Assembly: GCA_002269645.1 (NCBI GenBank)
Contig: NIVC01000137.1
Span: forward strand, 627,688-691,687
Source of the DNA: Macrostomum lignano
Lineage: Eukaryota
DNA length: 64,000 bases
Reading direction: 5' to 3'
The notes under the pieces were generated by a model that was given only the letters and a program-made list of their open reading frames with translations, did no database searches and was not told where the DNA came from. The position numbers and the translations under genes were made by a program. Shown here one piece after another: positions 10,770-64,000 of the stretch; positions within the stretch are counted from its first letter, which is position 1; each line of letters begins with the position of its first letter.

Positions 10770-14015
<3,246 letters not shown>

Positions 14016-39561: not shown

Positions 39562-39729
39562 ATCCCCTCGACATTCGATCATCTTGCGCCATTGGCCTCG
39601 CACCAGGCCAGGTAGAACTTCCCTCTTTTTCCTTTGCTTTTTGTTGAAATTATAACATTTTATGCCAAACGTGAAAAGTCTGAAAGTAAGCTTTATAATT
39701 ATACTTGTAACAAATGTTGGTAAGACTAT

Positions 39730-40046
39730 AGGGGCGTCATAATACACAATAGAGGGGCGCCATAATACACAATAGAGGGGCGCCATAATACACAATAGAG
39801 GGGCGCCATAATACACAATAGAGGGGCGTCATAATACACAATAGAGGGGCGCCATAATACACAATAGAGGGGCGCCATACCAGTAATACATAATAGAGGG
39901 GCGCCATAATACACAATTGAGGGGCACCATAATACACAATTGAGGGGCGCCATAATACACAATAGAGGGGCGCCATAATACACAATAGAGGGGCGCCATA
40001 ATACACAATAGAGGGGCGCCATAATACGCAACAGAGGGGCGCCATT
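39730..40046. repeat. 23-bp minisatellite (aggggcgccataatacacaatag), about 13 units
   Basis: Visible directly; followed by an 82-bp caggggcg...cgcccctg mini-element at 40088-40169. Confidence 0.95.
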
Positions 40047-40275: not shown

Positions 40276-40316
40276 CCGACTGCGAATTAAAGATCTGGCT
40301 ACAGCCTGTGATTATT

Positions 40317-41078
40317 ATGCGTGGGCTTGTCATGGAGTCCAAGCCCCTCATGGTGTTCCTTCTCGCCTTTCTGGACAGCCAGCAGCAGCCAGCCCTGGCC
40401 CAGCTGTGCCCCTCGCCATTCAGCCTTGAAGCCGGAAAATGCATATTCGTGAACAAGGTGAGGAGCTTCAGCTGGTGCGAGGCCAACCGGCAGTGCGCCA
40501 TGATCGGAGGCGAGCTGCTCAACTCGTACAGCTCTCTGCAGCTGCTCAGCAGCATGCCCAGTTTCGCCTGCAGCAGCTGCCACATCTGGTTTGGAGTGAC
40601 CGACTTGGCTGACGAGAGATCTTCGAGCCGATCGGGCTGGCAGTTGGTCAACGGCAACGGCGTCATGCCGCTGAATGACTCACTGTGGGGTGCTTCAACT
40701 GAGCCAAACGGAGGAACCGGAGAAAACTGCGTACTGCATTTATCCTATGGAAAAATGGGAAATTTCTATTGTTCTCGCTCACTCGGATTCACTTGCGAGT
40801 GGACTCCGAGTGCCGCTCAGCCGCTGCCAACTGCTGCCTCGTGGAAGCTGACTCGGTTTAAGCAGACCAGCTACCACGCCAGCACTGAGTACTGCTACTC
40901 TGACCTGCAGCCGGTGGCCAACTCGCTGCAGTGCATGGCGGCTGCCATCAACTCAGGCAACTGCAGACACGTGCTGTACAACAGCAAGCTGAGAGCCTGC
41001 CGCCTGCTGCTGTTCACCGACGCTCAGGTGGAGGCGGAGATCGAGACGAGCGCCGACTGGGTCAAGTTTAGCGTGTAG
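40317..41078 (+). CDS. C-type lectin + PAN-like, copy 6 (253 aa from ATG 40317; a downstream in-frame ATG is possible)
   Basis: Paralog with EPN; N-terminal MRGLVMESKPLMVFLLAFLDSQQQPALAQ. Confidence 0.88.
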   Translation: MRGLVMESKPLMVFLLAFLDSQQQPALAQLCPSPFSLEAGKCIFVNKVRSFSWCEANRQCAMIGGELLNSYSSLQLLSSMPSFACSSCHIWFGVTDLADERSSSRSGWQLVNGNGVMPLNDSLWGASTEPNGGTGENCVLHLSYGKMGNFYCSRSLGFTCEWTPSAAQPLPTAASWKLTRFKQTSYHASTEYCYSDLQPVANSLQCMAAAINSGNCRHVLYNSKLRACRLLLFTDAQVEAEIETSADWVKFSV

Positions 41079-44000: not shown

Positions 44001-44397
44001 CTTGATGGCCTGTCAAAATGATGAGAAAAAAGCTACCGCCCGCATCCTCTCAGACCATCTGGCGCCAGTCTCAGCATTGAGTGAGGCGCAGGTGGCTGTC
44101 AGACCAGCTCGAAAGCAATGATTTTTGACCCAAAAGCAGCACCTACTGTATGTTATGATAACTACAAGTCATCTAGGGCAAAATCTAGGCAATCCCGCTT
44201 TAATCTTACAACTTAAAATCTTAAGAATCTTACATAATCTAGGCAAAATCATATAACTAGTATGAATTCTAGGAAAATTACATAAAGGGAAGAAAAAATG
44301 CCCATAGCCTGTTGTTAGTAGGCTAGTAAGTTTGGAGCCCATGTGCATGAGCGTGAAGTTTGGAAAAAAGTGCGTCCTCATCATTCACAGACAAGCA

Positions 44398-44722
44398 ATA
44401 GATTCACCAGACAATCACAGACTTGCCTTAGATTCACCAGACAATCACAGACTAGCCTTAGATTCACCAGCCAATCAAAGACTCGCCTTAGATTCACCAG
44501 CCAATCACAGACTCGCCTTAGATTCACCAGCCAATCACAGACTCGCCTTAGATTCACCAGCCAATCACAGACTAGCCTTAGATTCACCATCCAATCACAG
44601 ACTAGCCTTAGATTCACCAGACAATCACAGTCTAGCCCTAGATTCACCAGACAATCACAGACTAGCCTTAGATTCACCAGACAATCACAGACTTGCCCAA
44701 ATAGATTCACCAGCCAATCACA
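44398..44722. repeat. 30-bp minisatellite (gattcaccagccaatcacagactcgcctta), about 11 units
   Basis: Visible directly; abuts the 3' end of the LINE fragment. Confidence 0.95.
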
Positions 44723-44729
44723 CAATATA

Positions 44730-45255
44730 TACGCTCGTTTTAGAACGCAGAGAGCCGGAGACCCCTGCATGCGTGCACGTGCTTGCAGAACAGGTGGGGG
44801 GGACAGACAGCAGCAACCTGAGGGGTTAGTGCAAGCGCCTGAAAGTCAGCGATGAGGCAGTCAGTCAGAGAGTTGCAGTGCGGGCTTGCGGTGGCGCAAT
44901 CGCTCGGTTGGCCGGTGCAGCAGGGCCAGGGCCAGTGGGACGGGCGCACCACGGCCCAGGGTCCCTGGACAGTGGCGGCCAGCAGCACCTGACGGCGCCG
45001 GCGCAGGGTAGCACTCAGAGGCGGAGCTCTAGCGCGGGCCATTGAGCGTTGCTCGGCAGGTGCACCGGGGTGGTGCATACGGCCATTAGCGCAGCAGCGA
45101 TCGCGGCTTATAGAGCGCGTGTAGGGCCTCACTCTCGCGACTCGGTCAGCGGCACAGCCTCCAATCCGTACATGAGAATCGGGTCTACGGCCGCGCGAAA
45201 CAGGCGCACCTTCAGGTTTTCTCTGGCAACTGAATTGAAGATGTTAGGAGTTTTT
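44730..45255 (-). mobile_element. 5'-truncated, degenerate non-LTR retrotransposon (RTE-like RT C-terminus)
   Basis: The minus frame gives KVRLFRAAVDPILMYGLEAVPLT, then after a stop and frameshifts RARAPPLSATLRRRR. This matches the K.RL...V...LLYG.E.W and PLS..IR.RR motifs downstream of the RT domain. The clade is inferred. Confidence 0.7.
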
Positions 45256-49081: not shown

Positions 49082-52000
49082 ATGGGCTGCTGCATCAGTG
49101 CCATTGCTTGCTGCTTCTGCAGTTCAGCTGCTTCTCTTTGCTGCACTTGTTTGCCTTCGTGCAAAAGCAGCACCTCAAGTAGAATTATGTACTCCTTGAT
49201 TTTTCTATTAGGAGCCGCTCTGTGCTGCATCATGCTTATTCCTGACCTAGACAAAACGCTGCAAAAAATACCAGCTTTATGCGACAACTACAAAATTGAC
49301 ACTCAGATTGGGCAGATTGACACCAAAATCTATTCGGGATTCAAATGCTACCTGGTCATTGGCTATGGAGCCGTGTACAGGGTGGCCTTTGGCATGACCT
49401 GCTTCTTTGTGCTCTTTGCACTCCTGATGATAAAGGTCAGTTGTTGAATTTTGCATCTTTTTATAGTTTACTATTTTAGTTTTAACTTAAGCTTCCTTTG
49501 CCTTAAAGCTGAAGAAATTCCTGTGGGATTTCCCTTTCCTGCGGGATTTTCCTTTCCTGTGAGATTTCCCTTTCCTGCGTGATTTCCCTTTCCTGCGTGA
49601 TTTCCCTTTCCTGTGAGATTTCCCTTTCCTGTGGGATTTCCCTTTTTGTAGGATTCCCCTTTCCTGTGGGATTTCCCTTGTAGGATTTCCCTTTCCTGTG
49701 AGATTTACCTTTCTTGTGGGATTTCCCTTTCCTGTGGGATTTCTCTTATCTCTGGAATTTCCTTTACCTGTGGGATTTACCTTTCCTGTGGGATTTCCCT
49801 TACGTTTGGGATTTCCCTTTCCTGCGGGATTTATTTTTATTATCGTATTTCCTTATCCTACATGGGATTTTTCTTATGGGATTTCCTTTATGGTATTTCT
49901 CTTTCCTGTGGAATTTTTCATTTTATTGATTAACCTGTTGTGGTGGGATTTACCTTTTTTAGGATTACTTTTGGGATATCCTTTAAATATGATTTTCTTA
50001 CTTGTTGTAACATATCATGCTACCTTTTAGGTGGAAAGCTCGAAAGATCCTCGATCTAAAATTCAAAACGGCTTCTGGTTTTTTAAGCTTCTAATTCTAA
50101 TTGGCCTGTGGGTTGGGGCGTTTTTTATCCCAGCGGAATCGGCTTTCATCAGCGTCTGGATGGTGATCGGCATGATTGGCGGCTTTCTGTTCATCCTGAT
50201 CCAGCTAGTGCTGCTTATTGATTTCGCGCACTGCTGGAACGAGGCCTGGACCAAGTCGTACGAGGAGAGCGAGAATCGTTGCTACTATATTGGCTTGCTG
50301 ATCTTCAGCATTCTGTTCTTTGTGCTGGCTCTGGCTCTCACCATTCTGCTGTACGTGTTTTATGCTAGCGATGCCAGCTGCCACATGAGCAAAGCGTTCG
50401 TGTCTGTTAATTTGATTTTGTGCATCTTGGTTACCGGCCTGTCTGTGCTGCCTAAAGTTCAGGTAAGAGTTTTATTATTGTTCATTTTTTAACTCAAAGG
50501 ACTCATAGCAACCGTGATGTACTTCTAGGACTCCTATAGCAACCGTGATGTACTTCTAGGACTCCTATAGCAACCGTGATGTGCTTCTAGGACTACTATA
50601 GCAACCGTAATATACTTCTAGGACTCCCATAGCAACCGTGATGTACGTCTATAACTCCCATAGCAACAGTCATATACCTCTAGGATTTCCATAGCAACAG
50701 TCATGTACTCTAGGACTCCCATAGCAACCGTGATGTACCTCTAGGATTTCCATAGCAACAGTCATGTACCCCTAGGATTTCCATAGCAACAGTCATGTAC
50801 CTCTAGGATTTCCATGGCAACAGTCCCCTATTGGAATAAGTTTTCAGACACTGTGGACAGTGCATCTAGTGCGCCATGGCAATCATAAAGTGGCCTGGAC
50901 GGTGCGTCATGACAATCTTCAAATCCTAAGGTGGTATGGACGCCATAGTCAGGAAGGTGGCAGAGTGTGCGCCGGAACAAATTTTGGCCTCTCCCAAAAT
51001 TGTGCGCCGTGCGCCGACACAAAAACCCTCGTGTGCGCCGTTGTGCGCCTGCCACTACCTGCCTTGCGACAATAAAAGACCTTTTTTTACAACATAGCAA
51101 CAATTTTTGTGCGCCAATATACGGGACGGTTACGGGCTATCTATATTATATTATGAGAAATTGAGATCGTTAAACCGAAAATAGAAATTTAAAAAATTTT
51201 TAATTAAATTTCTTATTTTTAAAACAAAACAAACATAAAAAGTAAGCAAATGGCAAAAACAAAGGTAAAAAGGAAAAGGAAAATATTTTATTTTATTTTT
51301 TATTTTTTGGTAGAATGCAGTGTTACATTAGATAGAACAGTGAATAGTGTACTGTAACAAGTAATGACTTACATCGTTACATGGGATCGCCACAAGGGTA
51401 ACGCTGCATGTGGCGCGGCGCCCGCCGCGCCGCGCCGCCATGCGCCGGTGTCCTCTGGTATGCGCCGTTGTGCGCCACTGTGCGCCAGTGCGCGTTTACA
51501 AGTTTACAAGTTTTACTTACAGTTTGCTGAATTTCCACCGTGCTGCTGACTTTCTCCTGTGCATGCTTCTCATCCTTGTTCAGCAGCGCTGTATGTAGCG
51601 CGTGATGTCCTCCTTGCATCTTACCTGTGAGCTGCTGTGCGTCATGGCGCATGGCGCGCGTAGCGCGCCATGCGCCATGACTATGAGGAAAAAGAAAAAG
51701 TGCGCCGGACGCTGTCCGCGAAAATACCACTTATTCCAATAGGGCAACAGTCATGTACCTCTAGGATTTCCATAGCAACAATCATGTACCTCTAGGATTT
51801 CCATAGCAACAGTCATGTACCTCTAGGATTTCCATAGCAACAATCATGTACATGTACCTCTAGGATTTACATAGCAACAGTCATGTACCTCTAGGATTTC
51901 CTTAGCAACAATCATGTACCTCTAGGGTTTCCATAGCAACAGTCATGTACCTCTAGGATTTCCTTAGCAACAATCATGTACCTCTAGGGTTTCCATAGCA

Positions 52001-53828
52001 ACAGTTATGTACCTCTAGGATTTACATAGCAACCCTCATGATTATATAAAAATAATTTTAAGAAGCTTAACTACAATTTAGCTTTTCTTTCATTGACGTC
52101 ACCGTCCGCAGGACCACCAGCGATCGGGCATCCTGCAGAGCGGCCTAATCAGCCTGTACGTGATGTACCTGACCTGGTCCGCCGTCACCTCTGTGCCTGA
52201 GAAAGCCTGCAATCCCACTCTGGAGATGGTTAACTACACGATGGTTCCTCCAACCTCGTCTAGTGGTTCAACAACTACGGCCGCTCCGCCCGTTACCGGG
52301 GACTCTGTGGTTGCCCAATTTAACTGGGAGACAGGTGTCAGTCTGGCAATCTTCCTTATCTTGGTGATCTATTCTTCGATCCGGACTGCTGCCCATAGCA
52401 ATGTTGGCAAACTCGGTCTCCAGGTGAGTGTTGGTGTCTTTGTGACATGTTTTTCTGTTTTATGATCTAACCATTGATGTTATTTTAAAAATACGCTATT
52501 ATGATCCAGTGTCATATAATAGGCGAAGTGCCATTTTGGTAGTTAAAAGCCATTTGGATAGTCAAAGTGCCGTTTTGAAAGTCAAAGTGCCATTTTGATA
52601 GTCAGAGCGGCATTTTGATAGTCAAAGTGCCATTTTGATAGTCAAAGTGCCATTTTGATTGTCAAAGCGCCATTTTTATCGTTAAAGCGCCATTTTGATA
52701 GTCAAAGTGCCATTTTGATAGTCAGAGCGCCATTTTAATAGTCAGAGCGCCATTTTGATAGTCAAAGTGCCATTTTGATAGTCAAAGCGCCATTTTGATA
52801 GTCAGAGCGCCATTTTGATAGTCAAAGCGCCATTTTGATAGTCAAAGTGCCGTTTTGATAGTCAAAGTGCCCCTTTGAATGTCAAAGTGCCATTTTGATA
52901 GTCAAAGTACCATTTTAATAGTGAAAATGCCATTTTGATAGTCAAAGTGCCATTTTAATGGTGAAACTGCCATTTTGATAGTCAGAGCGCCATTTTGATA
53001 GTCAAAGTGCCATTTTGATAGTAAAAGTGCCATTTTGATAGTCAGAGCGCCATTTTGATAGTCAGAGCGCCATTTTGATAGTCAAAGTTCCATTTTGATA
53101 GTCAAAGTTCCATTTTGATAGTCAAAGTGCCATTTTGATAGTCAAAGCGCCATTTTGATAGTCAGAGCGCCATTTTGATAGTCAAAGCGCCATTTTGATA
53201 GTCAAAGTGCCGTTTTGATAGTCAAAGTGCCCCTTTGAATGTCAAAGTTCCATTTTGATAGTCCGAGCGCCATTTTGATAGTCAAAGTGCCATTTTATTA
53301 GTGAAAATGCCATTTTGATAGTCAAAGTGCCATTTTGATAGTCAAAGTTCCATTTTAATAGTGAAAATGCCATTTTGATAGTCAGAGCGCCATTTTGATA
53401 GTCAGAGCGCCATTTTGATAGTCAAAGTGCCATTTTGACAGTCAAAGCGCCATTTTGATAGTCCAAGTGCCGTTTTGAATGTCAAAGTGCCATTTTGATA
53501 GTCAAAGTGCCATTTTGATAGTCAAAGTGCCATTTTGATAGTCAGCGCCATTTTGATAGTCAAAGTGCCATTTTGATAGTAAAAGTGCCATTTTGATAGT
53601 CAGAGCGCCATTTTGATAGTCAAAGTGCCATTTTAATAGTGAAAATGCCATTTTGATAGGCAAAGTGCCATTTAATTGGTAGAGTTATGTTGGTTTAACA
53701 TTACTTTTAACCTCCATTACCATTATAATTAGAAGAGCCATTTTAGTCAACAGTATCATATTTAATTTAAGAAACGCCATTCCATAACGTATTTAATTAC
53801 TTTTGCCTTGCAGACAAGAAGTGAACAG
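49082..53828 (+). CDS. SERINC: Serine incorporator (SERINC/TMS1 family), 5' exons only; the gene continues beyond the window
   Basis: Exons 49082-49435, 50031-50462 and 52112-52423 (all phase 0, GT-AG), plus a probable microexon 53814-53828. Motifs MGCC..C.CC..S..SSTSSRIMY, GYGAVYRVAFG, VESSKDPRSKIQNGFWFFK, LIQLVLLIDFAH.WNE.W, PKVQ.HQRSGILQS..YVMYLTWSA. The C-terminal YSYSFFH...WVK segment was not found in the window. An upstream acceptor ends at 48993. Confidence 0.93.
49515..49930. repeat. Degenerate ~20-21-bp minisatellite (gggatttccctttcctgt) in SERINC intron 1
   Basis: Visible directly. Confidence 0.9.
50500..52035. repeat. ~27-31-bp minisatellite (ctctaggatttccatagcaacagtcatgtac) in SERINC intron 2, split by a MITE
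   Basis: Arrays at 50500-50825 and 51745-52035. Confidence 0.92.
50826..51744. mobile_element. Non-autonomous DNA transposon (919 bp), TIR ccctattggaataag, 8-bp (or 9-bp) TSD
   Basis: Perfect 15-bp TIR; caacagtc duplicated at 50818-50825 and 51745-51752; internal tgcgcc/ggcgca subterminal repeats. Confidence 0.88.
52520..53672. repeat. 20-bp minisatellite (cattttgatagtcaaagtgc), about 57 units, in SERINC intron 3
   Basis: Visible directly. Confidence 0.97.
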
Positions 53829-54415
53829 GTAAACTTAGCGTCGAAGGATGTTTTTCAAAAAATCAAATTTTGCTTCTTCTGTACTTGCACCTGTCACATT
53901 TCAAAAGCTGCAGCATTTCTATGCCTTTGATATGCTGTTTTCTCTCTGTCACTTAATGAATTTTCTGTCTGAGTAAATTAAATTTTTTAAAAATTATTCT
54001 TCCGTATAACAAACAGAGCACATCGATAATAAAAAATGAAATAATACTTAGAGAAAGTAGTGCTTCGTTTTAATAACAATGTAGAATTAAAAAAATGTTA
54101 ACAAATTTTAACGGAAAACTTTATGAAACTGTGTAAAATAAGTGTTAATGTATGATCTAATTTGTACTGGTAGGAGTATTTTTAACTGTCGCCTTTAAAA
54201 AAACTTTAGAAGATTTCTAAATGCACATTTTATAACCAGTAGAACAAGCTAACAGAGTCTTGAGTGTGTAAAATAAAGTTTCAAGCATTTTTCGATAGAA
54301 GCATAGTGTTTAAAAAGAAAAGCAACCCTAAATGTATTAGGAGTAGTACTTTTTAATAACCTAATAACCAGTGGTAAAAAATCACTGGTAGCCTATCAGT
54401 TACCAGTGCTGATAA

Positions 54416-54932
54416 GTTCGATTTTACGAAGCACTGATAAAAGATTTTGCTTGGTTGATATATAAGTAGCTCGCTTGCTACCAAATTTGGAAGTTGGCCC
54501 ATAGACAAATAAAACGAAAGTCGCGACAAGTAGAAAGGGACAAGGAATTGTCTCTTAAAATTTGCTTCGTATTTCTCCATTTCTGAGTGGAAAGAGCTCA
54601 CTAGCTTTCTTGGTTCGCCACTGTGACTCAATAGTCAATACTCAATAGTTCTTAAACTGTGACTCCACAGTTGAAGAAGGCCCATAATTTTGATATTTAT
54701 CCTGTTTCGAGGGTGGATTAAAATTTGCTTGATTTTATCTACGATTTCTTACCAGTGGTAGACTGATAAGAGCTTCGTAAAATTGGATTCAGCACCTCTG
54801 CCACACAAAATTGTCTATATGGTTATCGATGGTTGATGAGTGGTAAAAAAACAGTGCTTTGTAAAATGGAGATAGAAAAATACCACTGGTTCCCTGGTAA
54901 TTACCAGTGGTAAGTGCTTCGTAAAATTGGCC
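54416..54932. mobile_element. Possible MITE with (g)attttacgaagcact...agtgcttcgtaaaatt inverted ends
   Basis: Inverted 15-16-bp motif and repeated accagtggtaa boxes; boundaries uncertain. Confidence 0.4.
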
Positions 54933-55289
54933 ATTGAGATAACATATTCATCAACTAAAACTCTATAGATCATAGACAAAATCTTTATTTTTAATCTCTC
55001 GAGGGGGGAGGCCCAGGGGTGGATTTCATGATTTCAAACTTCATGAAATTTGTCCCCGCCTGGCTGTCGTAATCCGGTTTTCATCCGGAGCGACATCCGG
55101 AATTTCATCCGGTACGTAATACAAATGTCCCATTTAAAAACCGGATGAGAGCCGGATGAAAAGTTTACAAACAGGATGAAAACATGCATATTTGACCTTT
55201 CATCCGGGTGTTCAACCAACATTAGTCCGGAAATTCATCCGGGAAGCTATCCGGAAAGCCGCGGAGAACAGGGCGGAGCAAATTCCGGA

Positions 55290-55626
55290 GCGAATCCGGA
55301 CGAAATGTATGCACGCCTCCACCGGATGAGAAACCGGACGAAGTTCCGGATGAATGCCGGATCAAATGTATGCACGCCTCCACCGGATGAGAAACCGGAC
55401 GAAATTCCGGATGAATGCCGGATCAAATGTATGCACGCCTCCACCGGATGAGAAACCGGACGAAATTCCGGATGAATGCCGGATCAAATGTATGCACGCC
55501 TCCACCGGATGAGAAACCGGACGAAATTCCGGATGAATGCCGGATCAAATGTATGCACGCCTCCACCGGATGAGAAACCGGACGAAATTCCGGATGAATG
55601 CCAGATCAAATATATGCACATGTCTA
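55290..55626. repeat. 61-bp tandem repeat, five copies (ccggatgagaaaccggacgaaattccggatgaatgccggatcaaatgtatgcacgcctcca); candidate subterminal repeats
   Basis: Unit starts at 55322, 55383, 55444, 55505 and 55566; inverted tccgg motifs at 55070-55110. Confidence 0.93.
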
Positions 55627-56523
55627 CCGGATGGTAAAGCAGATGACATGTTAAAGAACTAAGTAAGGTTGACAACAAGACGAAATCTTTTGAAAACGTA
55701 AGAAAACAAATTGCTGGAAACACCTCAAAGAAAGCAAGGTATATTGCACTTGCACAGAGGGTGGCCAACCTCTAATTCACTGTGCTGGATAGAGTAGTGG
55801 AAGCTGAATATATTGAAACCGAAGATAACTTTTAAAGTTGCGTGTCGCTAAAAATGCAAATACACAAGACATGCTTGAGTCAAAAATAGAATGGCAAAAC
55901 CTCACATTGGGTGGACAAATCAGGAGAAATGGAGAATGAGACGACACACTGTCTTTTGGGCGGCTACAAATTAGTACCAGGCAGAAAAACTAGAAATTTC
56001 ACAGAAGAAAAACTTCAAGCTACACGAAGAAACAGGCGCAGAAAAAAAAACTCACTTATAAAATTGGGGACAACAGAAAAAATAGCGACATATACATTTT
56101 CCATACTGGGAGTGAAACAGAAAGTGTCAACAGAAAACCAGAAACGCAGACCCGAGGGCGATATTACCTATCTGCAGAACAGTGATTACTGTACACGTTA
56201 GTAACGTTAAGTAACGTTACTGTTCTAAAACACCCACCATGATGTACAGATTGCAGGCGATGGGTACATCGTGCACTTTACATACTGCAGAATTTTTGAG
56301 GAATTTTTGTCCTAATGATATGCAACTGTCTAATCGAGCACATGCTCTTAAGACCCCTAGGCGCTACATATTTGATTCGTGACCAATAGCTAAGTTGCAG
56401 TCGCAGAAGCAGTAGTGTCATGAGCATATTCGCGCCACGCCGCGGCCACTGGCAATGGCACACGGCTCCCTCTTATATCCTATAGTCTGCGACAAAACGA
56501 CTGGCCCACGACTATATAGCCTA

Positions 56524-58683
56524 CTATCCCATCAGGGAAAGTAGCATATCTTCCGCATTGTCCACATCGCCGGCCGGACGCTGACTTGTGGGCCCAACCT
56601 CTGCGAAGACAGCTCTGGCCTGGTCAAAGATCGCGCTAGCGGGGGCATTGTCCGAGTCAGCGGCGACTTCTTCCGCCTCACTCGTCGGTCCGATTATGCG
56701 CACAATCGTACCCACGTCTTCGTGTCTGCCTGTCCCCCGTTTAGCCGAGCTGCCTGGCCCTGATTGGGCAGAGCCGCCTCGCCGTGGCTTGGCAGTCTTT
56801 GTACCAGGCCGACCGTTTAGTGTGCCACGGGTGCGCTTTGGCATCCCCAGTCTTTCCCGTGCAGTTTCACCGCAGCGCGTAAACGCGCGCTGCAGCTCTG
56901 CAGAAGTGTACTGCACGGCAGCATTGGCAAGCCACTGCTTGGCGGCGGCTAGCTTTCCGGGATTTGCCGGCACTGAGATGTAGCCGCAAGCCTTGCGACC
57001 TGACAGGCTACTGTTCGCCAGCTCGGTGTCAGTAAAAATGGCCCTGAAAAGGGCCCTGATCGTCGCCAGTCGGGCCGATCGGCGCGCTAAAAGAAGCTCA
57101 GTCTCGTCGCGCTCATCGAGATCGACGCCTTCCATCATCGCCTTTTGCAGGTCGGCTAGGCGGCTGTCCAGTTCGGATCGGAGCTGCACCGACGTTTTTA
57201 GATACGGTTGCTTGTCGGACAGTGACACTGTGCCACCTGACAGCAGACTAGCCGACGATGGACCCGCCTTGTTACAGGTGAGCAGTAACTGGCGAGTCTG
57301 GGACGCCGACAGCTCGCAATTAGCATCAAAGGCGCCACCTCCGGGGTCCGCCAGCGCGTCATCGCCAGCGTCAGAAGCCGTGCTGTCCGACTCCACTGGA
57401 CCTGGCTGGCAGCCAGAAGCTGGGATCGCTGCTGCGTCTGCAGACTGTGGCACCATACACTGTGAGGCCCGAACGATTAGCGCGTTAGCAGTCTTTACAT
57501 TCCGTTCCAGGTTGGTGAACTTCGTACGTTCCTGATCTAATTGTCGCAAGAGCTTTGCTTCCATCTTCTGTGCCACGACTGCCTTCTGCTGCAGAACTTT
57601 TATCTCTTCTCGCAATTGGGCTTCAGTGACGCGGGCTGCCCGAACCTCGGAACCTGAAATATTGGTTTATTCAATACCCTAGACTACCAATGACCGGATG
57701 TACGTATATGTATACAAACAAAACATGTATGTATGTATGTATGTATGCTAACATGTACACATGCACTACGGCAGAACCTCTGTATACTCACCTTGTGCAT
57801 TAGTGAGTGTCTTGGCCCTTTGCAACTCGAGAAGGAGTCCTTTGCAGGACACGCAAGCTCGGGGGAGCTCCGTCGGCTGAGCGTGGACGTTAGTCAAGCT
57901 TGCGGCTCCAGAGGCTTCGGCTTTATTAGAAAATGGTCCCCGTACAAGCCTCCCTGGGTATCGCTTTGCGGTCTTTCGGTTGGTCTTCGCCGTGACAATG
58001 CAGACGCGACAGCCTACTTGTACGGGAATAGCCGATTCCCGCGCAACGGCAACAATAAGCGGTGCTGCCGTGGATCCATCAGTGCCGACAACTTGGGTCT
58101 TGTCAAGATAGTCGTCATATTGAAAAAGGAAGTACCGCTGCGTCCTCTCTGCTTTGTACGGCACCATATCAGGCGACGGATTGCAACCTGCAGCTGTTGC
58201 GCCAGCCTGCAGAGCAGTAGTCGCAGCATCCGGCGGTTGGGAGTCACCTGCAGTCGTCACCTCAGCCTGCAGTGCAGTAGTCGCAGCATCCGGCGGTTGG
58301 GTGTCACCTGCAGTCGTCACCTCAGCCTGCAGTGCAGTAGCTGTAGCACCTGGCGGTTGGGTGTCACCTGCAGTCGTCACCTCAGCCTGCAGTGCAGTAG
58401 CTGTAGCACCTGGCGGTTGGTTGTCACCTGCAGTCGTCACCTCAGCCTGCAGTGCAGTAGCTGTAGCATCTGGCGGTTGGGTGTCACCTGTAGCCGTCAA
58501 GCCAGCCTGCAGAACAGTAGCCGCAGAATCTGGCGGTTGGGTCTCCCTTGCAGCCGTCCCTTTCTTGCAAGCCACCAAAGAGACCTTGGCCGCCACCTTT
58601 TTTACACTTGGGCGGTGTCGTTTGACCGGCATGTCGGCTTTCTGTTTTGCTGCGGTGCGTTTACGTGCGGTGGCTTCATGCAT
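56524..58683 (-). CDS. Two-exon coiled-coil + BEN-domain protein, 673 aa (transposon cargo)
   Basis: Exon 1 58683-57792 (donor AG|gtgagt, phase 1) and exon 2 57653-56524 (acceptor tttcag|) total 2022 nt and are open. BEN-like IRALFRAIFTDTELANSSLSGRK....NPGKLAAAK....RAFTRCGETAR. Coiled coil LREEIKVLQQK...LERNVK. Exon 1 has a 20-aa repeat. The domain call is by motif recognition. Confidence 0.78.
58190..58555 (-). repeat. 60-bp coding tandem repeat (TTAGDTQPPGATATALQAEV), about six copies
   Basis: Visible in the DNA and in the translation. Confidence 0.93.
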
Positions 58684-59150
58684 AGTCGCTCTGGAAAGAC
58701 GTTTAGATAACCAAAGTTGCTTTGGGGCAGAACAGCATCAGAAATTTCTTAATGAGGTGACGTTAATCTTTTCATTAATGAGGTTAATGAGGTGACGTTT
58801 AGTTAGCGTACTAAACTTTTTACACAGACGAGATAGGAGTTAAGAGCATTCTTAAAACTAAAAGGTTTTGTACTACAACCCCATAGACCACAAGCGTTAA
58901 AGATCGTAGGACGCAATGTTATGAAAGAAAGTAATGAAACAAATGTCTGGAAACATCTTAGAGAACAAAATTGACACACGTTGCATTACACATGCACAGA
59001 GGGCCAACCTCTAATGTATTTTGCATAAAAGTTCGATAAAGTTTCGATATAAGTTCTGCAGCAGAAGGCAGTCGTGGCACAAAAGATGGAAGCAGAGCTC
59101 TTGCGACAATTAGATCGGGAACATTCGAAGTTCACTATTACTTCATTACT

Positions 59151-59897
59151 TCATAACTTCACGAAACATACTTCTTTAGTTTTAAAATAGAAAAGCCTGT
59201 CCCCGCTTAGCAGTCCATTGTAACTACAGATCTCACGGCTTCTTCTGGGGGCCTCTTTCGGTAAGACGGATATGTCGCGCAGAGGGCGCCGTCGACGCTT
59301 GCCGACCTTCATGTGCTCCAGGGGAGCAGGCGGCGGGCTGGGTGGCATGTCAATGGCAAAGAAGTTCGGGGCCTGCAGGATTGTACGATGCCGGTGACGA
59401 CCATGACTCTGCAACCGCCTGTCCCGTTCTTCTGGGGGCAGAGCCCCATACCAATCCGCACAGTCTGGACAGCACTGGGCAGGTAGGCGTCTTCTTTCGT
59501 CTCGGCGGCGCGACTCATAAGATGGGGGGGCCTCGTCAGGCAGTCTGTTATAGTCTTCTAGGGTGTACCGACCTGCGCCGGGCTGTTGAAGGCTTGCGCT
59601 AGAGCTAGGCAGACATGGCGACGATGGCAGGACGGAGTAGCCAGGACCTTCTTTGCATGCAGCTTGCGTGCTGCATGCGACAGGGGACGACGGACCCAGC
59701 AATGACGGTGACATAACGTCGCCGTCGGGTGAGACCTCAGGAGTCCACTTTGGCGGCGGCGACCCAGCCACCGTGGTCTCGTCGCCACTGGAGCGGTCAT
59801 CGAGGTCACCAAGCACGGAATCTGGAATGACAGTATCGAGCAGCTTGGACCAGTCGATGACGGCCTGCTCGCTCGCTCGCTTGGATTTGCTCGACAT
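59151..59897 (-). CDS. 248-aa protein with a CtIP/Sae2 C-terminal-like domain (CxxC + RHR motifs)
   Basis: RRRDERRRLPAQCCPDCADWYGALPPEERDRRLQSHGRHRHRTILQAPNFFAIDMP aligns without large gaps to the conserved human CtIP tail as I recall it ([58 protein letters not shown]). The N-terminal half is S/P-rich and lacks the CtIP coiled coil. Confidence 0.8.
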   Translation of the reverse strand: MSSKSKRASEQAVIDWSKLLDTVIPDSVLGDLDDRSSGDETTVAGSPPPKWTPEVSPDGDVMSPSLLGPSSPVACSTQAACKEGPGYSVLPSSPCLPSSSASLQQPGAGRYTLEDYNRLPDEAPPSYESRRRDERRRLPAQCCPDCADWYGALPPEERDRRLQSHGRHRHRTILQAPNFFAIDMPPSPPPAPLEHMKVGKRRRRPLRDISVLPKEAPRRSREICSYNGLLSGDRLFYFKTKEVCFVKL

Positions 59898-59947
59898 TCA
59901 CTGCAGTTGGGTTAAGGAGCAAAATTTTTTTAATTGACATAAATGTA

Positions 59948-61253
59948 CGAGGGGCACTAGATGGGTTTCTAGCTGCGGTCAACATGTAACAGTTATAAAG
60001 ATGAAACTTTCAGAGCTTTTCAAAGTACTCTCCATCAGCTTGGATACACCGCCTCATCCGCTCAAACCAAGTTTCAAAGCAGTGGCGCCACTCTGAGTGG
60101 GATACCCCCTCAACGGCCGATCTATAGGCATCAACAGCCTCTTCGGCGGAGGAAAATCGGCACCCTCGCATGGAATTCTTGATGAATGGAAATAAAAAAA
60201 AGTCACACGGTTCCAGGTCAGGTGAATATGGTGGATGACTGAGCTGCTGGAAGCCCACCGTCTGTAGAAACTCTCGAGTTCGATTCGCCGTGTGCGCACT
60301 GGCGTTGTCCTGGTGCAGCCAGAGACCTCGAACGCCGCACTTTGGCCGCGCCTCTTTAAGGCTGCTGATGACACGCGGCAGGCAGACGGTGCAGTACCAA
60401 TCTGCAGTCACTGTGCGCTGGCTCTCGAGTGCTACAGTCGCAATGTGGCCAGTCTTTCGGAAGAAAGTTGCCACCATTTGCTTGCCAGTGCTCCGACCCC
60501 TGACAACCTTGGTCGGCGGGGCTTCATCTTCAAAAGCCCACACACGCGACTGGCATTTCCGCTCGGGTTCGTAGCAATACACCCACGTTTCGTCACATGT
60601 GACAATGTCTGTGACAGACTTCGACGTCCCTCCGCCAAACCTGTCCAGCATTTCCTGGCACCAGCTCATGCGGGCCTGCTTCTGCTCGGTGGTGAGCAAA
60701 TGCGGCACCCAGCGACTGGTCAGCTTGCGGACAGCGAGGTGATCACGAAGGATAGAAGCGACTGTCGGCGATGAGATTCCAAGACATGCCTCAATCGTTT
60801 GATACGTCACTCGCCGATCAGCCTCAATCATGCGCCGCACGCGGTCGATAGTTTCAGGTGTCGTCACTGAAACAGGTCGGCCGGTTCGACCTTCGTCTTC
60901 CAAGCTGTCTCGGCCACGCTTGAACTCCCGGAACCAGGCGGTGACGGTGGCGATGGATGGCGCAAGGTTAGGAAAGGCAGCAGACAGCCGCTCGTGGCAC
61001 TGGTGAAATGTCAAGCCGCTCTTAAAATCGTAGAAAATCATGGCACGAAAGTGTTCACGATTGAGCTCCATTACAGTGCTGAAAGAGTCACAGACCTTGT
61101 TGAGACAAAATGCGACAGTGAGAGAATGGTGACAATTAGGTGCATGAAACTTTGGGGACCATGATAAAACTTCTTATTCAATATGCTCAGAAAATATGGC
61201 CTAATTTGAATAAACGGTTTGACCGCAGCTAAAAACTTATCTAGTGCCCCTCG
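59948..61253 (-). mobile_element. Full-length mariner element (1306 bp), 35-bp TIRs, TA TSD
   Basis: TIR cgaggggcactagat(gg/aa)gttt(c/t)tagctgcggtcaa with 3 mismatches; TA at 59946-59947 and 61254-61255. Confidence 0.96.
60010..61071 (-). CDS. Mariner DD34D transposase, 353 aa, uninterrupted
   Basis: WVPHLL, CDETWVY, HQDNASAH, YSPDLEPCDFFLF. Confidence 0.96.
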   Translation of the reverse strand: MELNREHFRAMIFYDFKSGLTFHQCHERLSAAFPNLAPSIATVTAWFREFKRGRDSLEDEGRTGRPVSVTTPETIDRVRRMIEADRRVTYQTIEACLGISSPTVASILRDHLAVRKLTSRWVPHLLTTEQKQARMSWCQEMLDRFGGGTSKSVTDIVTCDETWVYCYEPERKCQSRVWAFEDEAPPTKVVRGRSTGKQMVATFFRKTGHIATVALESQRTVTADWYCTVCLPRVISSLKEARPKCGVRGLWLHQDNASAHTANRTREFLQTVGFQQLSHPPYSPDLEPCDFFLFPFIKNSMRGCRFSSAEEAVDAYRSAVEGVSHSEWRHCFETWFERMRRCIQADGEYFEKL

Positions 61254-61983
61254 TACCAGTGCCTATTATACTCGTATGTCTCTATAATACCTTAATAATT
61301 CGTTTTGCTAGTGCCTATGGTAGACTGTTGGTTCTATAATTATTGAGTTAGTTATTTCAAGGAGAGAGAGTAATAGTGCTCAGAAACTTACTAAGAGAAT
61401 GGAGTGGGATAATATACAAAGAGGATTCAGAGAGAGTTGTACCGTGACCCTCTAATCTTGGCGAACGCCCGATTAAGACTGCAAACTAATACATGTACCA
61501 GTACTAAGACCGCTCAGGCCAATACATAAGACGCTACCAGAACGCTACCAGAAACGCTACCAGAAACGCTACCCAGAAAGTATTTGAATGAAATTCTAGG
61601 AAATAGGTAAAATTATCAGACAGAGGCAAAAGATCTGTTACAACTTTGGTGGCAGCTTAAAGGATAGTTAAAAGGACAGGACCATAACGCCTGTTACAGC
61701 TCGTATCAGCGCTGGTATCCTCTTTCTCACCCGTACGGACGTAATTAAATAAAAATAGTTACTCAAAAATATGGACACAAAACAGTTGCAGTTCAGATTC
61801 GCGATTGCCCAGACGGAGCAAGCCAGACAGTATACTTCTATACAAGTGCAGTTTAGCAGATGAACCAGCATACGAGCGTGATATAGCGAGGCCCGCACTA
61901 AAATCAGTGACGCGAAATGTACGCATATAGAGGATGTACGCAAAATTAAATTGCATGGGACGCAGCATGACTAAAAATATTTG

Positions 61984-64000
61984 TTAAGAAAAGCCAAACT
62001 GCGCATAAGGAACCAAAGTAATCTTTGTGTTTGACACAACGCAGGCGCCGACGATGTCCTCCGTTGCAGCCTGCCTGACTTCACCAAGGTACTCTGCGAC
62101 TCCAAAAGGATCGGCGAGGAGCCGCCTGACATGTGCGAATCGGCAACCGCGGTGAGCAGATTCCTTCGGCACGGCACACAGCATCTCCAGAGGATCGATT
62201 TCGACGTCCTGCCCACGCAGCTCACGCAGCGTCAGTACAACACCTGTGGCAGTCGCACTGATGGTCTCCACGCGCTGGAACCACGAGTGGCATCAAGGCA
62301 GGAGACTTTCGGATGCTCATCGCCTATAGGCTGTCGAAATACTTCGATAAACAACCCACTTGGAAGCGACGCCGTGTGCCATCCGTCCGCCGTACCCATG
62401 GTCGTCGCAGCTTAACGCCGAAGTGAATAATGCACTGCATTTGTGAGTCACGTGCTGCTGCGGCTCCAAGTCATCGCTCTTCAGTCGGCTCTCAGCTTCT
62501 ATGAGAGCAAATTCACGCTCAATGGCATGTACAATTTCAACGTCAGTACGCCGCGAACCGTGAAGACGCTGCCGTAAGTGGACGTGCATCGTCTCAAAAA
62601 GCCCTGCCGATTGCGTGTGCAGTGGGCCCGCGAGATACGCGTATGACACCATATGGGCACAAACATGGTGGGCGTTATACGTGAGTGCGCGAAGAGAATA
62701 TAGACGAGCCAAATTGGCGTGGAAGTGCCTCAGCGAAACTTCGACGTGACACAGTTCACTCTTTGGCGCACCTTCAAGCGTCAACCAGAACACTGCGGAC
62801 GAAAGCACGAGCAAATGCCAATAGTGAGCCTCTGGCAGAAAATCTTCTAGTAGCATTGGGAAGTAAGCAATTATCCACAATGCCAGTTCATGTCCCCGTA
62901 CGTGCCTGATGTCCTTCAGCAGTCGGATGGAATGTCGCTGAACGGACCTGGGAACTCAAATGTAGCGCATGCGCTGTGATATGTCACCAATCCGTTTGTG
63001 CAGGTCGGGGCAATTCTCCGCGAACCGGTCAGGTTTCTCGTGGCGCACGAGGAAAAGCTGAAACAGTAGCCAGCGCACTAATCCCAAGCAAAGCTGATGG
63101 AGAAAGCAAGGAGGCGTCGCTCTGACAAAGTCGAAGCCAAACAGATCACCAAGCGGAGATTGTCCACGTACACCCAGAGTGTCATCTCCGTTGCCACGTA
63201 ACGTCCGGTGTTCCGCAAGGATACATGTGTCATTCAGCGATCGAACTACTGTCTGGACACATCCGAGGCGGCGTGCGTTCATTTGCATGGCGTCTGTCAA
63301 CTCCACATCATACACTCTGCCGTGGCCTGACGGATGAACTGACGTCCGTAGGTAGCACTTGTCGCATCCGTATACGGCGGAAAAGCGCTTAAAGCACAAA
63401 GCGTCTGCCCTGGCAGGTGCGTCAAACATGGCGAACAATACATGTACCCGAAGACGCTGCCGAACGCCATGTCGATCCACATACTGTATACCATTCAGAC
63501 GCAGATCGTTAAGTCCGTCAACTATAATAGGTAGACATGCTTGGGATGCACCTTTGTAGTTCCTGCCCAGACTCCGAGCTTCATTACGAATTGCAACTCT
63601 GTACCGGTCGTGAACTTCAACGAAGCACAAATAAAAGCGGGCACACCTCAACAGTACTTGTCCTGCAAAGCGGGAACCCATCCGAGCATAAGATGCCGGA
63701 GACGTCGCTGCGACTCTCCACATCGATGCCATCGACGAATTTTTGTACAGTTCGCTGCTACGCACGTGAGCACCTCGGGATCTATGGCACGGTCGGCAGG
63801 GAACACAACGTGGTCGAGCATTCCACGCCACATCACAAGCGCTTTCAGCTGCATAGGACCATCAAAGTGCCAGAAATTTGCGACGGCTGCGTCCTCCGCA
63901 GTGGACGCACGTTGCGGTGCTTGGATCACACCGTCCGGGAGAGTTCTTGTAACACTCGTTGCAGACTGTGAGAGCACAGCGTCGTTCCAGAGAATGACTG
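61984..64000 (-). pseudogene. CMC/EnSpm-type transposase pseudogene (one frameshift, three in-frame TGA stops); the 5' end runs off the window
   Basis: LYKNSSMASMW, FDAPARA...F..VYGCDKC, FLHQLCLGLVRWLL, HELALWIIAYFP, YSLRALTYNAHH...GPLHTQSAGLFE. ORFs 63831-62956, 62880-62317 and 62271-61984 are one frame separated by TGA codons. The frame of ORF 63977-63648 joins by a frameshift near 63750. Confidence 0.85.

What the first reader, a model, noticed from the sequence alone, without database searches (positions are those of the whole stretch)
59151..59897. CtIP/Sae2 DNA-end-processing module carried as cargo in a CACTA/EnSpm-type transposon region
Seen: an open 248-aa ORF between an EnSpm-type transposase remnant and a BEN gene, all on the same strand. 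Its C-terminal half has the CxxC (CPDC) and RHR motifs and the surrounding CtIP tail pattern. The position of the human CDK site T847 (NTPENFW) reads LQAPNFF, and the N-terminal oligomerisation coil is absent. Established: CtIP/Sae2 activates MRN/MRX and is needed to open hairpin-capped DNA ends; CACTA-type excision footprints are generally explained by hairpin intermediates. Inference: the element captured an unregulated CtIP mini-domain, either to help resolve its own excision hairpins or to act as a decoy that biases repair. I know of no described CtIP-carrying transposon, but I could not search.
Basis: partly seen in the sequence, partly recalled or inferred. Interest (0 to 1): 0.9.

Follow-up and report, generated by a model that had tools for sequence, protein, structure and literature searches.

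The report
Isolated CtIP tail gene among transposons
An intact 248-codon reading frame really does encode the C-terminal, MRE11-activating half of the DNA-repair factor CtIP. It sits in a nest of transposons and is bracketed by a short CACTA-type inverted repeat, but nothing shows that a transposon uses it, and it could still be the last exon of the host's own CtIP gene.

Summary
The ORF exists at 59151-59897 on the minus strand. Its residues 108-215 are a genuine CtIP/Sae2 C-terminal domain. An exhaustive phmmer search gives E 4.5e-23 to the full-length CtIP of the flatworm Macrostomum lignano. A profile built only from Pfam-positive CtIPs gives 67.5 bits. Pfam itself is below threshold.

- The "EnSpm" frame is a 671-codon pseudogene with four stops and no profile hit.
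- "BEN" is unconfirmed.

The missing CDK site (T847 reads Q) is shared with M. lignano's ordinary host CtIP. It is therefore a lineage trait, not a sign of deregulation.

The only two copies of CACTATTACT in the window form an inverted pair that tightly brackets the ORF (p about 7.5e-4). However, the match is only 10 nt, there is no target-site duplication, and the transposase-like frame lies outside the pair. No second copy was found in any collection I could search.

My best reading (0.4) is a passively captured, Pack-CACTA-like fragment of the CtIP terminal exon. The main rival (0.3) is the host CtIP's own terminal exon. Functional transposon cargo gets about 0.1.

The parts
59151..59897 (-). 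248-aa ORF: S/P-rich linker (aa 1-107), CtIP/Sae2 C-terminal domain (aa 108-215), AT-rich 28-codon tail (aa 221-248)
59253..59576 (-). CtIP/Sae2 C-terminal ('C-rich-H') domain: RRRDERRRL, CPDC, RHRHR, QAPNFF, PPSP, KRRRRP
   Evidence: phmmer E 4.5e-23 / 1.4e-13; custom HMM 67.5 bits; alignment A2 keeps all invariant columns; Pfam SAE2 only 14.2 bits
59154..59237 (-). C-terminal extension beyond where relatives' proteins end. It is AT-rich and looks non-coding. A possible GTGAGA splice donor lies at its start.
   Evidence: sequence read directly
59133..59142 (-). Candidate 3' terminal inverted repeat AGTAATAGTG (minus strand), starting 9 nt after the stop codon
61369..61378 (-). Candidate 5' terminal inverted repeat CACTATTACT (minus strand)
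   Evidence: Only two exact copies in the window, forming an inverted pair; 15/20000 shuffles; no extension and no TSD
59948..61253 (-). Intact mariner nested between the 5' TIR candidate and the ORF. It has 38-nt TIRs (92%), a TA duplication at 59946-59947 and 61254-61255, and a 353-aa transposase at 60010-61071.
   Evidence: (HTH_48, Transposase_1, DDE_3)
61984..64000 (-). Transposase-like pseudogene, outside the TIR pair. One frame of about 671 codons with 4 in-frame stops runs off the window. It carries an FDAPAR...CDKC motif.
   Evidence: Pfam none, DUF4218 E 0.05; no homologues; AF2 unusable
59046..59135 (.). Arm B of a 90-nt, 93% inverted duplication. It abuts the 3' TIR candidate. Arm A is at 57515-57604, inside the 5' coding part of the 'BEN' ORF.
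   Evidence: no TSD
56524..57615 (-). It has an N-terminal coiled coil and a helical middle. BEN is not confirmed.
57766..58683 (-). Neighbouring 305-aa ORF built partly on a 60-nt tandem repeat (58203-58558)

Best explanation
The ORF is an intact copy of the 3'-terminal coding part of a flatworm-type CtIP gene. It comprises the S/P-rich linker and the CxxC...RHR...NF(F/W) domain that contacts MRE11-RAD50, detached from the N-terminal tetramerisation coil. It lies in a transposon nest inside a short unit of about 0.94 kb (before the mariner landed in it). That unit is bounded by a CACTA-type 10-bp inverted repeat.

I read it as a passively captured gene fragment, of the transduplicated Pack-CACTA kind, or as a truncated paralogue created by transposon-mediated rearrangement. 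I do not read it as a gene the transposon evolved to use.

Shown: the domain identity, the intactness, the TIR pair, the nested mariner, and the neighbouring decayed transposase-like frame.

Inferred: capture itself. Also inferred: if expressed, the product would be a monomeric CtIP tail that can dock on MRE11-RAD50 but cannot tetramerise or bridge DNA, so it would be a weak activator or competitor at best.
For: - Domain identity.
- No coil in the ORF and none in the 4.1 kb upstream. The in-frame TGA abuts the ATG.
- The unique inverted CACTATTACT pair brackets the ORF, with p about 7.5e-4 for a CACTA start and 0.005 for a CAC start.
- The GC-rich segment of about 665 nt is roughly the size of M. 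lignano's terminal CtIP exon (603 nt).
- The reading frame runs on for 28 AT-rich codons and stops 9 nt before the TIR, as expected when a captured piece reads into element sequence.
- The ORF uniquely lacks the conserved 'VV' of the VVRxxDERR motif, a 4-aa deletion that hints at relaxed constraint.
- A decayed CMC-like frame lies 0.6 kb upstream on the same strand.
- A 90-nt inverted duplication starts at the 3' TIR, pointing to rearrangement at that end.
- Pack-CACTA capture between neighbouring insertions is a documented mechanism in plants (PMC13317346). At the site where such a hybrid element forms, matching TSDs are not expected.
Against: - The TIR is only 10 nt, with no similarity beyond it and no 3-bp duplication (GAG versus AAC).
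- I tried several terminal motifs in several regions before finding the pair, so the real p-value is nearer 0.002-0.01.
- Only one copy is visible, and there are no relatives in any collection.
- The ORF has no stop in 248 codons and keeps every invariant residue, while the neighbouring transposase-like frame has four stops. That fits a selected host gene better than an old neutral fragment.
- Synonymous sites against M. lignano are saturated while the protein is conserved (dN 0.37; 62 identical residues but only 24 identical codons).
- The transposase identity itself is unconfirmed.
Confidence: 0.4

Rival explanations
1. It is simply the terminal coding exon of the host's own single-copy CtIP gene. 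The coiled-coil exons lie beyond the window end. The mariner and the transposase-like pseudogene are insertions in a long last intron. The 10-nt inverted repeat is chance, or consists of the ends of unrelated insertions.
For: - In M. lignano the same domain is carried by a terminal exon of about 200 codons, preceded by about 80 non-conserved residues. That gene sits between housekeeping genes.
- The nearest relative of the ORF is that host gene.
- The Q-for-T847 change and the PP(S/T)P site are shared with it.
- All invariant residues and an uninterrupted frame fit purifying selection.
- A plausible internal acceptor (tgtcattccag|AT at codon 25/26) would bypass the upstream TGA (read directly).
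- No second CtIP-like sequence is in the window.
Against: - It requires an intron longer than 4.1 kb holding a sense-strand transposase-like frame. Introns seen here (Serinc 0.6-1.7 kb) and in M. lignano CtIP (about 1.1 kb or less) are short.
- The CACTA-type pair bracketing the ORF is unlikely by chance.
- The conserved VV motif is lost.
- There is an AT-rich 28-codon read-on past the usual protein end.
- An inverted duplication starts 16 nt after the stop codon, where a 3' UTR should be.
- There is no synteny with the M. lignano locus, although this is weak evidence if the species are distant.
Confidence: 0.3
2. One reading: the ORF is functional cargo of a CACTA/CMC transposon, kept because a free CtIP tail helps open excision hairpins or biases repair of the donor site.
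For: - It is on the same strand as, and close to, a CMC-like transposase frame.
- A CACTA-type TIR pair brackets it.
- The ORF is intact while the transposase-like frame has decayed.
- Short C-terminal CtIP-family peptides can stimulate Mre11 on their own: a 15-aa Ctp1 peptide does so (10.1101/2023.08.05.552090).
- CMC-type elements in fungi are reported to carry TET/JBP dioxygenase genes, a precedent for DNA-enzyme cargo (PMC12730594, abstract seen).
Against: - The TIR pair excludes the transposase-like frame, so the two are not shown to be one element.
- There are no further copies anywhere, although cargo genes of active families are normally multicopy.
- The 'deregulation' feature is a lineage trait of the host gene.
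- The transposase family assignment has no profile support.
- There is no TSD.
- No literature precedent for CtIP in a transposon was found.
Confidence: 0.1
3. It is a stand-alone truncated CtIP paralogue (a mini-CtIP gene) that arose by ordinary segmental duplication and happens to lie among transposons. The inverted repeat is coincidental.
For: - The ATG sits 3 nt after a good acceptor-like site (cttaac...ctgcag), with an in-frame stop before it, so the ORF looks like a complete CDS.
- The intact frame and conserved residues fit a working gene.
- Its divergence from M. lignano CtIP (55-57% in the domain, synonymous sites saturated) would fit an old paralogue if the host is a close relative of M. 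lignano. A shared tRNA-derived SINE family at 85-90% identity hints at that.
Against: - A Serinc exon from the window finds no Macrostomum protein, and nothing above 55% over the full exon. The host therefore does not look close to M. lignano.
- SINE central domains can be conserved across phyla (PMC4758252).
- The mariner sits 47 nt from the ATG, where a promoter would be.
- The TIR pair is left unexplained.
Confidence: 0.12

Closest known systems
CtIP / RBBP8 / Sae2 / Ctp1 / COM1 family (Pfam PF08573 SAE2, C-terminal 'C-rich-H' domain)
   Same: It has the RxxDERRxL, CxxC, RHR and NF(W/F) motifs and the basic RRxRP tail in the right order and spacing. Homology is significant to Pfam-positive members.
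   Different: It has no N-terminal tetramerisation coil in the ORF. The Pfam score is below the gathering threshold. The T847/S267-equivalent is Gln. The conserved VV before RxxDERR is missing. It carries an extra 28-residue tail.
Macrostomum lignano BOX15_Mlig004387 (PAA54340.1 / PAA88737.1), a full-length flatworm CtIP
   Same: It is the best hit: 55-57% identity over 106-108 residues. It shares QAPNFFAI(D/E)MPP(S/T)P, CCPDC and YTL.DYN.LP. Its Pfam score is sub-threshold in the same way (14.3 bits). The domain lies in one terminal exon of similar size.
   Different: The M. lignano protein has the N-terminal coiled coil. Its gene has four exons and lies between acetyl-CoA synthetase and EMP24 genes, with no transposase nearby. 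Synonymous sites between the two are saturated.
S. pombe Ctp1
   Same: It has a non-phosphorylatable residue at the T847/S267 position. Its C-terminal peptide alone can stimulate Mre11 (10.1101/2023.08.05.552090). This shows that a tail without that CDK site can still be active.
   Different: Ctp1 keeps its N-terminal coil and is an ordinary host gene.
Pack-CACTA / Pack-MULE transduplication in plants (gene fragments enclosed by TIRs of non-autonomous elements)
   Same: It is a short TIR-bounded unit that contains a host-gene-derived coding piece and no transposase. The piece reads on into element sequence. A related autonomous-type frame lies nearby (PMC13317346).
   Different: The host here is an animal. 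Only one copy is seen. The TIR is only 10 nt and there is no TSD. The captured piece is a complete, conserved functional domain rather than a scrambled fragment.
Fungal CMC-type DNA transposons reported to encode TET/JBP dioxygenases
   Same: They set a precedent for cut-and-paste elements carrying a host-like DNA-metabolism gene (PMC12730594; abstract only).
   Different: There the cargo recurs in many copies and lineages next to a recognisable transposase. Here neither has been shown.

Membership tests
CtIP/Sae2 (C-terminal domain) | Statistically significant sequence similarity to the C-terminal domain of accepted members | tested here: met
   phmmer E 4.5e-23, 1.4e-13 and 3-7e-4 against a 1.84-billion library. 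An HMM of five Pfam-positive members gives 67.5 bits, E 4.7e-20, and is the only hit in the window.
CtIP/Sae2 (C-terminal domain) | Pfam PF08573 at or above the gathering score (19.8 bits) | tested here: not met
   14.2 bits, E 0.095. The full-length M. lignano CtIP also fails, at 14.3 bits, so the model under-detects this clade.
CtIP/Sae2 (C-terminal domain) | CxxC ... RHR motif pair | tested here: met
   CPDC at aa 143-146 and RHRHR at aa 167-171. These are invariant columns C37, C40, H62, R63 of alignment A2.
CtIP/Sae2 (C-terminal domain) | CDK S/T-P site at the position of human T847 / yeast S267 | tested here: not met
   The position reads Q175-A176. M. lignano CtIP reads the same. S. pombe Ctp1 also lacks this site. 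A conserved PP(S/T)P site lies at aa 187.
CtIP/Sae2 (whole protein) | N-terminal coiled-coil tetramerisation domain | tested here: inconclusive
   It is absent from the ORF, and no match was found in the window with M. lignano or fish N-termini. However, the window ends 4.1 kb upstream, so exons further up cannot be excluded.
CtIP/Sae2 (whole protein) | Stimulates MRE11-RAD50 endonuclease / hairpin opening | not testable with these tools
   This needs biochemistry or complementation.
CACTA / CMC (EnSpm) transposon containing the ORF | Terminal inverted repeats beginning CACTA that enclose the ORF | tested here: inconclusive
   A perfect 10-nt pair lies at 61378-61369 and 59142-59133, the only two copies in the window. 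Only 15 of 20000 shuffles give such a pair. There is no similarity beyond 10 nt.
CACTA / CMC (EnSpm) transposon containing the ORF | 2-3 bp target-site duplication | tested here: not met
   The flanks are GAG and AAC.
CACTA / CMC (EnSpm) transposon containing the ORF | CMC-type DDE transposase recognised by a profile and lying inside the same termini | tested here: not met
   The transposase-like frame (61984 onward) lies outside the TIR pair. The joined translation has no Pfam hit at E<=10. One piece gives DUF4218 at E 0.05. It has no homologues. From my own knowledge, the FDAPAR...CxxC...NxHxxxH..GP motif order looks CMC-like.
CACTA / CMC (EnSpm) transposon containing the ORF | Several copies, or copies at other loci with the same cargo | not testable with these tools
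   The host genome is not in any collection. None was found in the window, in 15 billion proteins, in metagenome contigs or in IMG/VR.
BEN-domain protein (neighbour 56524-57615) | BEN domain by profile or fold | tested here: not met
   No Pfam hit at E<=1. PDB gives only annexin noise. The AF2 model has pLDDT 45 and is unusable.
mariner (neighbour 59948-61253) | HTH_48 plus mariner DDE transposase, short TIRs, TA duplication, about 1.3 kb | tested here: met
   HTH_48 at 1.1e-09, Transposase_1 at 2.3e-05, DDE_3 at 1e-06. 38-nt TIRs at 92%. TA on both sides.

The most novel reading that the evidence does not exclude
A non-autonomous CACTA-type element of an animal has captured, and keeps under selection, an intact CtIP C-terminal MRE11-RAD50-activating module. 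The module acts in trans on the hairpin or blocked ends made during excision of its family, or competes with host CtIP to steer repair of the donor site. That would be a transposon carrying its own DNA-end-processing cofactor.
Probability: 0.08. Interest if true: 0.8.

Novelty: new member of a known kind. Interest (0 to 1): 0.38.

Why it matters
If the ORF is only the host's last CtIP exon, or a dead captured fragment, it is ordinary. In that case it adds just a divergent, Pfam-invisible flatworm-type CtIP tail and an example of how transposon debris can mislead annotation.

If genome-wide data show that the CACTATTACT-bounded unit is mobile and the ORF is conserved among copies, it would be different. 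To my knowledge and from two literature searches, it would be the first animal Pack-CACTA-like capture of a complete DNA-repair activation domain. It would also give a direct handle on how cut-and-paste elements interact with MRN-CtIP end processing.

The shared Q-for-T847 change in two lineages also matters for CtIP biology. CDK control at that site is not universal in animals.

Tried and rejected
1. Direct Pfam gave only a sub-threshold SAE2 hit, so I relied on the exhaustive phmmer search and a custom HMM.
2. The word-indexed homologue search found nothing for the ORF or for the transposase-like ORF.
3. PDB sequence search found nothing for the ORF or the repeat ORF, and only annexin noise for the 'BEN' ORF.
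4. Exact-protein look-ups of the ORF, the mariner transposase and a lectin gene found nothing on record. The source genome is therefore not in the collection.
5. An apparent TVIP...LG.LDD match between the ORF's N-terminal part and the penultimate M. lignano exon would have implied an intron-less retrocopy. It is not significant (115 of 500 shuffles), so I dropped it.
6. The 90-nt inverted repeat is not a clean TIR element: it has no TSD and one arm is coding sequence.
7. Host taxon:
   - The Serinc exon gives at most 55% identity over the full exon, to annelid and mite proteins, and no Macrostomum hit.
   - A shared tRNA-SINE at 85-90% points to M. lignano, but such SINE domains can be conserved across phyla.
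   - An ENA contig carrying a 73%-identical Serinc piece belongs to an unrelated low-GC genome.
   - The taxon remains unresolved, so orthologue versus paralogue cannot be settled.
8. Rfam and tRNA scans found nothing.
9. dN/dS against M. lignano could not be computed because dS is saturated.
10. GC3, CpG and codon-usage comparisons with the host lectin and Serinc genes do not discriminate.
11. There is no synteny with the M. lignano CtIP locus.
12. Metagenome and IMG/VR scans found no relatives. One alignment was too diverse to search with.
13. AlphaFold2 models of the two neighbouring ORFs have pLDDT 45 and 36. I ran no fold search on them.
14. Literature searches for CtIP or Sae2 in transposons found nothing relevant. 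A search for the SINE sequence found no paper.
15. The CATCCGG subterminal-like array at 55082-55633 cannot be tied to the unit.
Full report
**1. The observation**

The coordinates 59151-59897 delimit a real ATG-to-TGA open reading frame of 248 codons. It is on the minus strand; the plus-strand translation is full of stops. An in-frame TGA directly precedes the ATG. Three bases upstream of the ATG lies an acceptor-like site...ctccttaacccaactgcag.

- CPDC at aa 143-146
- RHRHR at aa 167-171
- QAPNFF at aa 175-180
- KRRRRP at aa 200-205

**2. Is it CtIP?**

Pfam alone would not say so. SAE2 (PF08573) scores 14.2 bits at E 0.095, below the 19.8-bit gathering score. The word-indexed homologue search and the PDB search were both empty.

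The exhaustive phmmer search of 1.84 billion cluster representatives gave seven hits at E <= 0.001, all through residues 108-215:
- P0001, Macrostomum lignano PAA54340.1: E 4.5e-23, 57% identity.
- P0002, a 315-aa metagenome protein with an N-terminal coiled coil: E 1.4e-13.
- Three fish CtIPs: E 3-7e-4. The two full-length ones carry the CtIP_N and SAE2 Pfam domains.
- Two fragments.

P0002, two of the fish proteins (P0004, P0006) and P0007 pass Pfam SAE2 at 35-49 bits. The M. lignano protein fails at 14.3 bits, just as the window ORF does. Pfam therefore under-detects this clade.

I built an HMM from the five relatives outside the Macrostomum clade: P0002, the three fish CtIPs and P0007. Four of them are confirmed Pfam-positive. 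It hits this ORF and no other of the 744 six-frame segments of the window (67.5 bits, E 4.7e-20). All seven invariant alignment columns (R, R, L, C, C, H, R) are kept. Family membership of the C-terminal domain is therefore established.

**3. The "unregulated mini-domain" argument**

- In the alignment, human T847 corresponds to Q175 of the ORF. M. lignano's CtIP reads VQAPNFFAIEM, almost the same as the window's LQAPNFFAIDM.
- The longer M. lignano isoform (PAA88737.1) has a normal N-terminal coiled coil. Its gene has four exons and sits between acetyl-CoA synthetase and EMP24 genes in both homeologous contigs.
- Loss of that CDK site is therefore a lineage trait of an ordinary host gene.
- S. 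pombe Ctp1 likewise carries a hydrophobic residue at this position, and a 15-residue Ctp1 C-terminal peptide stimulates Mre11 without CDK phosphorylation (10.1101/2023.08.05.552090).
- The ORF keeps seven S/T-P sites. One is a PP(S/T)P site just after NF(F/W) that is conserved in M. lignano and in P0002.

**4. The neighbourhood**

All of the following lie on the minus strand, listed from upstream to downstream.

(a) A single reading frame runs from the window end to 61984. It is about 671 codons long, with four in-frame stops and no frameshift. It contains FDAPAR...CDKC followed by NAHHVCAH...GPL...FE. From my own knowledge, that is the CMC/EnSpm motif order. No profile confirms it:
- Pfam finds nothing in the joined translation at E <= 10.
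- One piece gives only DUF4218 at E 0.05.
- No homologues were found.
- The AlphaFold model is unusable.

(b) About 0.7 kb of AT-rich non-coding DNA follows.

(c) An intact mariner lies at 59948-61253. It has 38-nt TIRs, a TA duplication and a 353-aa transposase with HTH_48, Transposase_1 and DDE_3 domains. It ends 47 nt upstream of the ATG.

(d) The CtIP ORF.

(e) Sixteen nucleotides after the stop codon begins one arm of a 90-nt, 93% inverted duplication. Its other arm is the 5' coding part of the "BEN" ORF. There is no TSD, so this is a rearrangement rather than a clean element.

(f) A 305-aa ORF is built partly on a 60-nt tandem repeat.

(g) The 363-aa "BEN" ORF has no Pfam, PDB or usable structural support for BEN.

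Host genes lie to the left: Serinc exons at 49.2-52.2 kb and five tandem lectin-like genes.

**5. Is the ORF inside a transposon?**

While looking for CACTA termini, I found that the decamer CACTATTACT occurs exactly twice in the 64-kb window when both strands are counted. The two copies are an inverted pair bracketing the ORF: a 5' CACTATTACT at 61378-61369 and a 3' AGTAATAGTG at 59142-59133, 9 nt after the stop codon.

I ran 20000 dinucleotide-preserving shuffles of the flanks. The number of shuffles giving a perfect inverted repeat of at least 10 nt was:

| Repeat required to start with | Shuffles with a pair (of 20000) |
|---|---|
| CACTA | 15 |
| CAC | 93 |
| any decamer | 5561 |

I had tried several motifs in several regions, so I put the honest p-value at about 0.002-0.01.

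Against a true element:
- There is nothing beyond the 10 nt.
- There is no 3-bp duplication; the flanks are GAG and AAC.

The pair encloses only the ORF and the later mariner insertion, about 0.94 kb without the mariner. The transposase-like frame and the "BEN" ORF lie outside it. If the pair is real, the unit is a non-autonomous, Pack-CACTA-like carrier of a CtIP fragment, not a transposase-plus-cargo element. In the published Pack-CACTA capture model, a genomic segment becomes enclosed between the ends of two neighbouring insertions (PMC13317346). At the site of origin, that model would not give matching duplications.

**6. Host exon or extra copy?**

For the host-exon reading:
- In M. lignano the whole domain lies in one terminal exon of about 200 codons, preceded by about 80 non-conserved residues. 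The window ORF has 107 S/P/D-rich residues before the domain. The GC-rich stretch is about 665 nt, roughly the size of that exon.
- The frame is intact and conserved. Synonymous sites against M. lignano are saturated (dN 0.37; 62 identical residues but only 24 identical codons). This indicates long-term purifying selection on the lineage.

For a detached copy:
- The TGA abuts the ATG.
- No coil exon is found in the 4.1 kb upstream.
- The ORF has a unique 4-residue deletion that removes the conserved VV of VVRxxDERR.
- A 28-codon AT-rich read-on ends 9 nt from the TIR.
- A rearrangement sits where the 3' UTR should be.

I could not settle the host species:
- The window shares a tRNA-derived SINE family with M. 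lignano at 85-90% identity. That is as high as between M. lignano's own copies.
- Yet a Serinc exon finds nothing better than 55% over the full exon, and no Macrostomum protein.
- No window protein is on record.
- SINE central domains are known to persist across phyla (PMC4758252).

Orthologue versus old paralogue therefore stays open.

**7. Copies elsewhere**

I found none. I checked the window, 15 billion proteins, JGI metagenome contigs and IMG/VR. Two literature searches found no CtIP- or Sae2-carrying transposon.

**8. Verdict**

The CtIP identity is confirmed. The context description is only partly right. The functional story is not supported, and one of its pillars, the lost CDK site, is contradicted.

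| Reading | Probability |
|---|---|
| TE-bracketed, passively captured or rearranged CtIP terminal-exon copy | 0.40 |
| In-situ terminal exon of the host CtIP gene | 0.30 |
| Stand-alone truncated paralogue unrelated to the repeat pair | 0.12 |

A genome-wide copy count, the sequence beyond 64000 and transcript data would decide between them.

Noticed in passing
window 59948-61253 (transposase 60010-61071, minus strand): An apparently intact mariner: 353-aa transposase with HTH_48, Transposase_1 and DDE_3 domains, 38-nt TIRs (35 of 38 matching), and a TA duplication. It is inserted 47 nt upstream of the CtIP ORF's ATG.
   Followed up: yes
window 14849-15592, 18447-19268, 23891-24637, 31495-32262, 40308-41078 (all plus strand): A tandem family of five single-exon genes, each about 250 aa, encoding secreted C-type-lectin-like proteins with a shared conserved C-terminal half (...YHASTEYCYSDL...CRHVLYNSKLRACRLLLFTDAQVE...). 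TATA-like boxes lie upstream. Pfam Lectin_C is only borderline (19.9 bits).
   Followed up: partly
window 12550-12837, 13438-13691, 20663-20962; L001 3166-3443 and 18906-19218; L002 4881-5190 and 18655-18965: A tRNA-derived SINE of about 290 nt is shared with Macrostomum lignano at 85-90% identity. That is as similar as M. lignano copies are to each other (84%). Either the host is related to Macrostomum or this is a very conserved SINE family.
   Followed up: partly
window 55072-55700: A subterminal-repeat-like array holds 18 of the window's 21 CATCCGG motifs, in both orientations. It includes 5.8 copies of a 61-nt tandem unit. It looks like transposase-binding-site clusters at a transposon end, but could not be tied to any element.
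   Followed up: partly
window 57515-57604 and 59046-59135: A 90-nt inverted duplication at 93% identity. One arm encodes residues 4-34 (coiled coil) of the 363-aa 'BEN' ORF. The other arm begins 16 nt after the CtIP ORF's stop and overlaps the 3' TIR candidate by 3 nt. It has no TSD.
   Followed up: partly
window 55743-55785, 58985-59024, partly 57756-57781: A motif of about 40 nt containing a small palindrome (CACAGAGGG(T)GGCCAACCTCTAAT) recurs downstream of each of the three minus-strand ORFs. Its meaning is unknown: a terminator or processing signal, or repeat debris.
   Followed up: no
window 54354-54438 and 54766-54927: A MITE-like unit of about 570 nt with imperfect inverted ends (ATTTTACGAAGCACT / AGTGCTTCGTAAAAT; TACCACTGG motifs).
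   Followed up: no
window 49163-49438, 50031-50462, 52115-52219 (plus strand): Exons of a Serinc (serine incorporator) host gene. The best relatives covering the main exon are only 50-56% identical (annelid, mite), so the host lineage has no close relative in the protein collection.
   Followed up: partly
window 11117-11677, 16066-17388, 21671-22433, 33050-33722, 39226-39816, 44332-44855, 58203-58558: Many mini- and microsatellite arrays have periods that are multiples of three, which keeps several frames open. They produce long spurious ORFs on both strands.
   Followed up: no
ORF aa 184-190 (window 59328-59348); P0001, P0002: The invertebrate CtIP relatives share a PP(S/T)P site 3-4 residues after the NF(F/W) motif (MPPSPPP / MPPTPEP / LPPTPSP). 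Vertebrates have the STQ (ATR-type) site there. It may be an alternative CDK site in lineages that lack the T847 equivalent.
   Followed up: no
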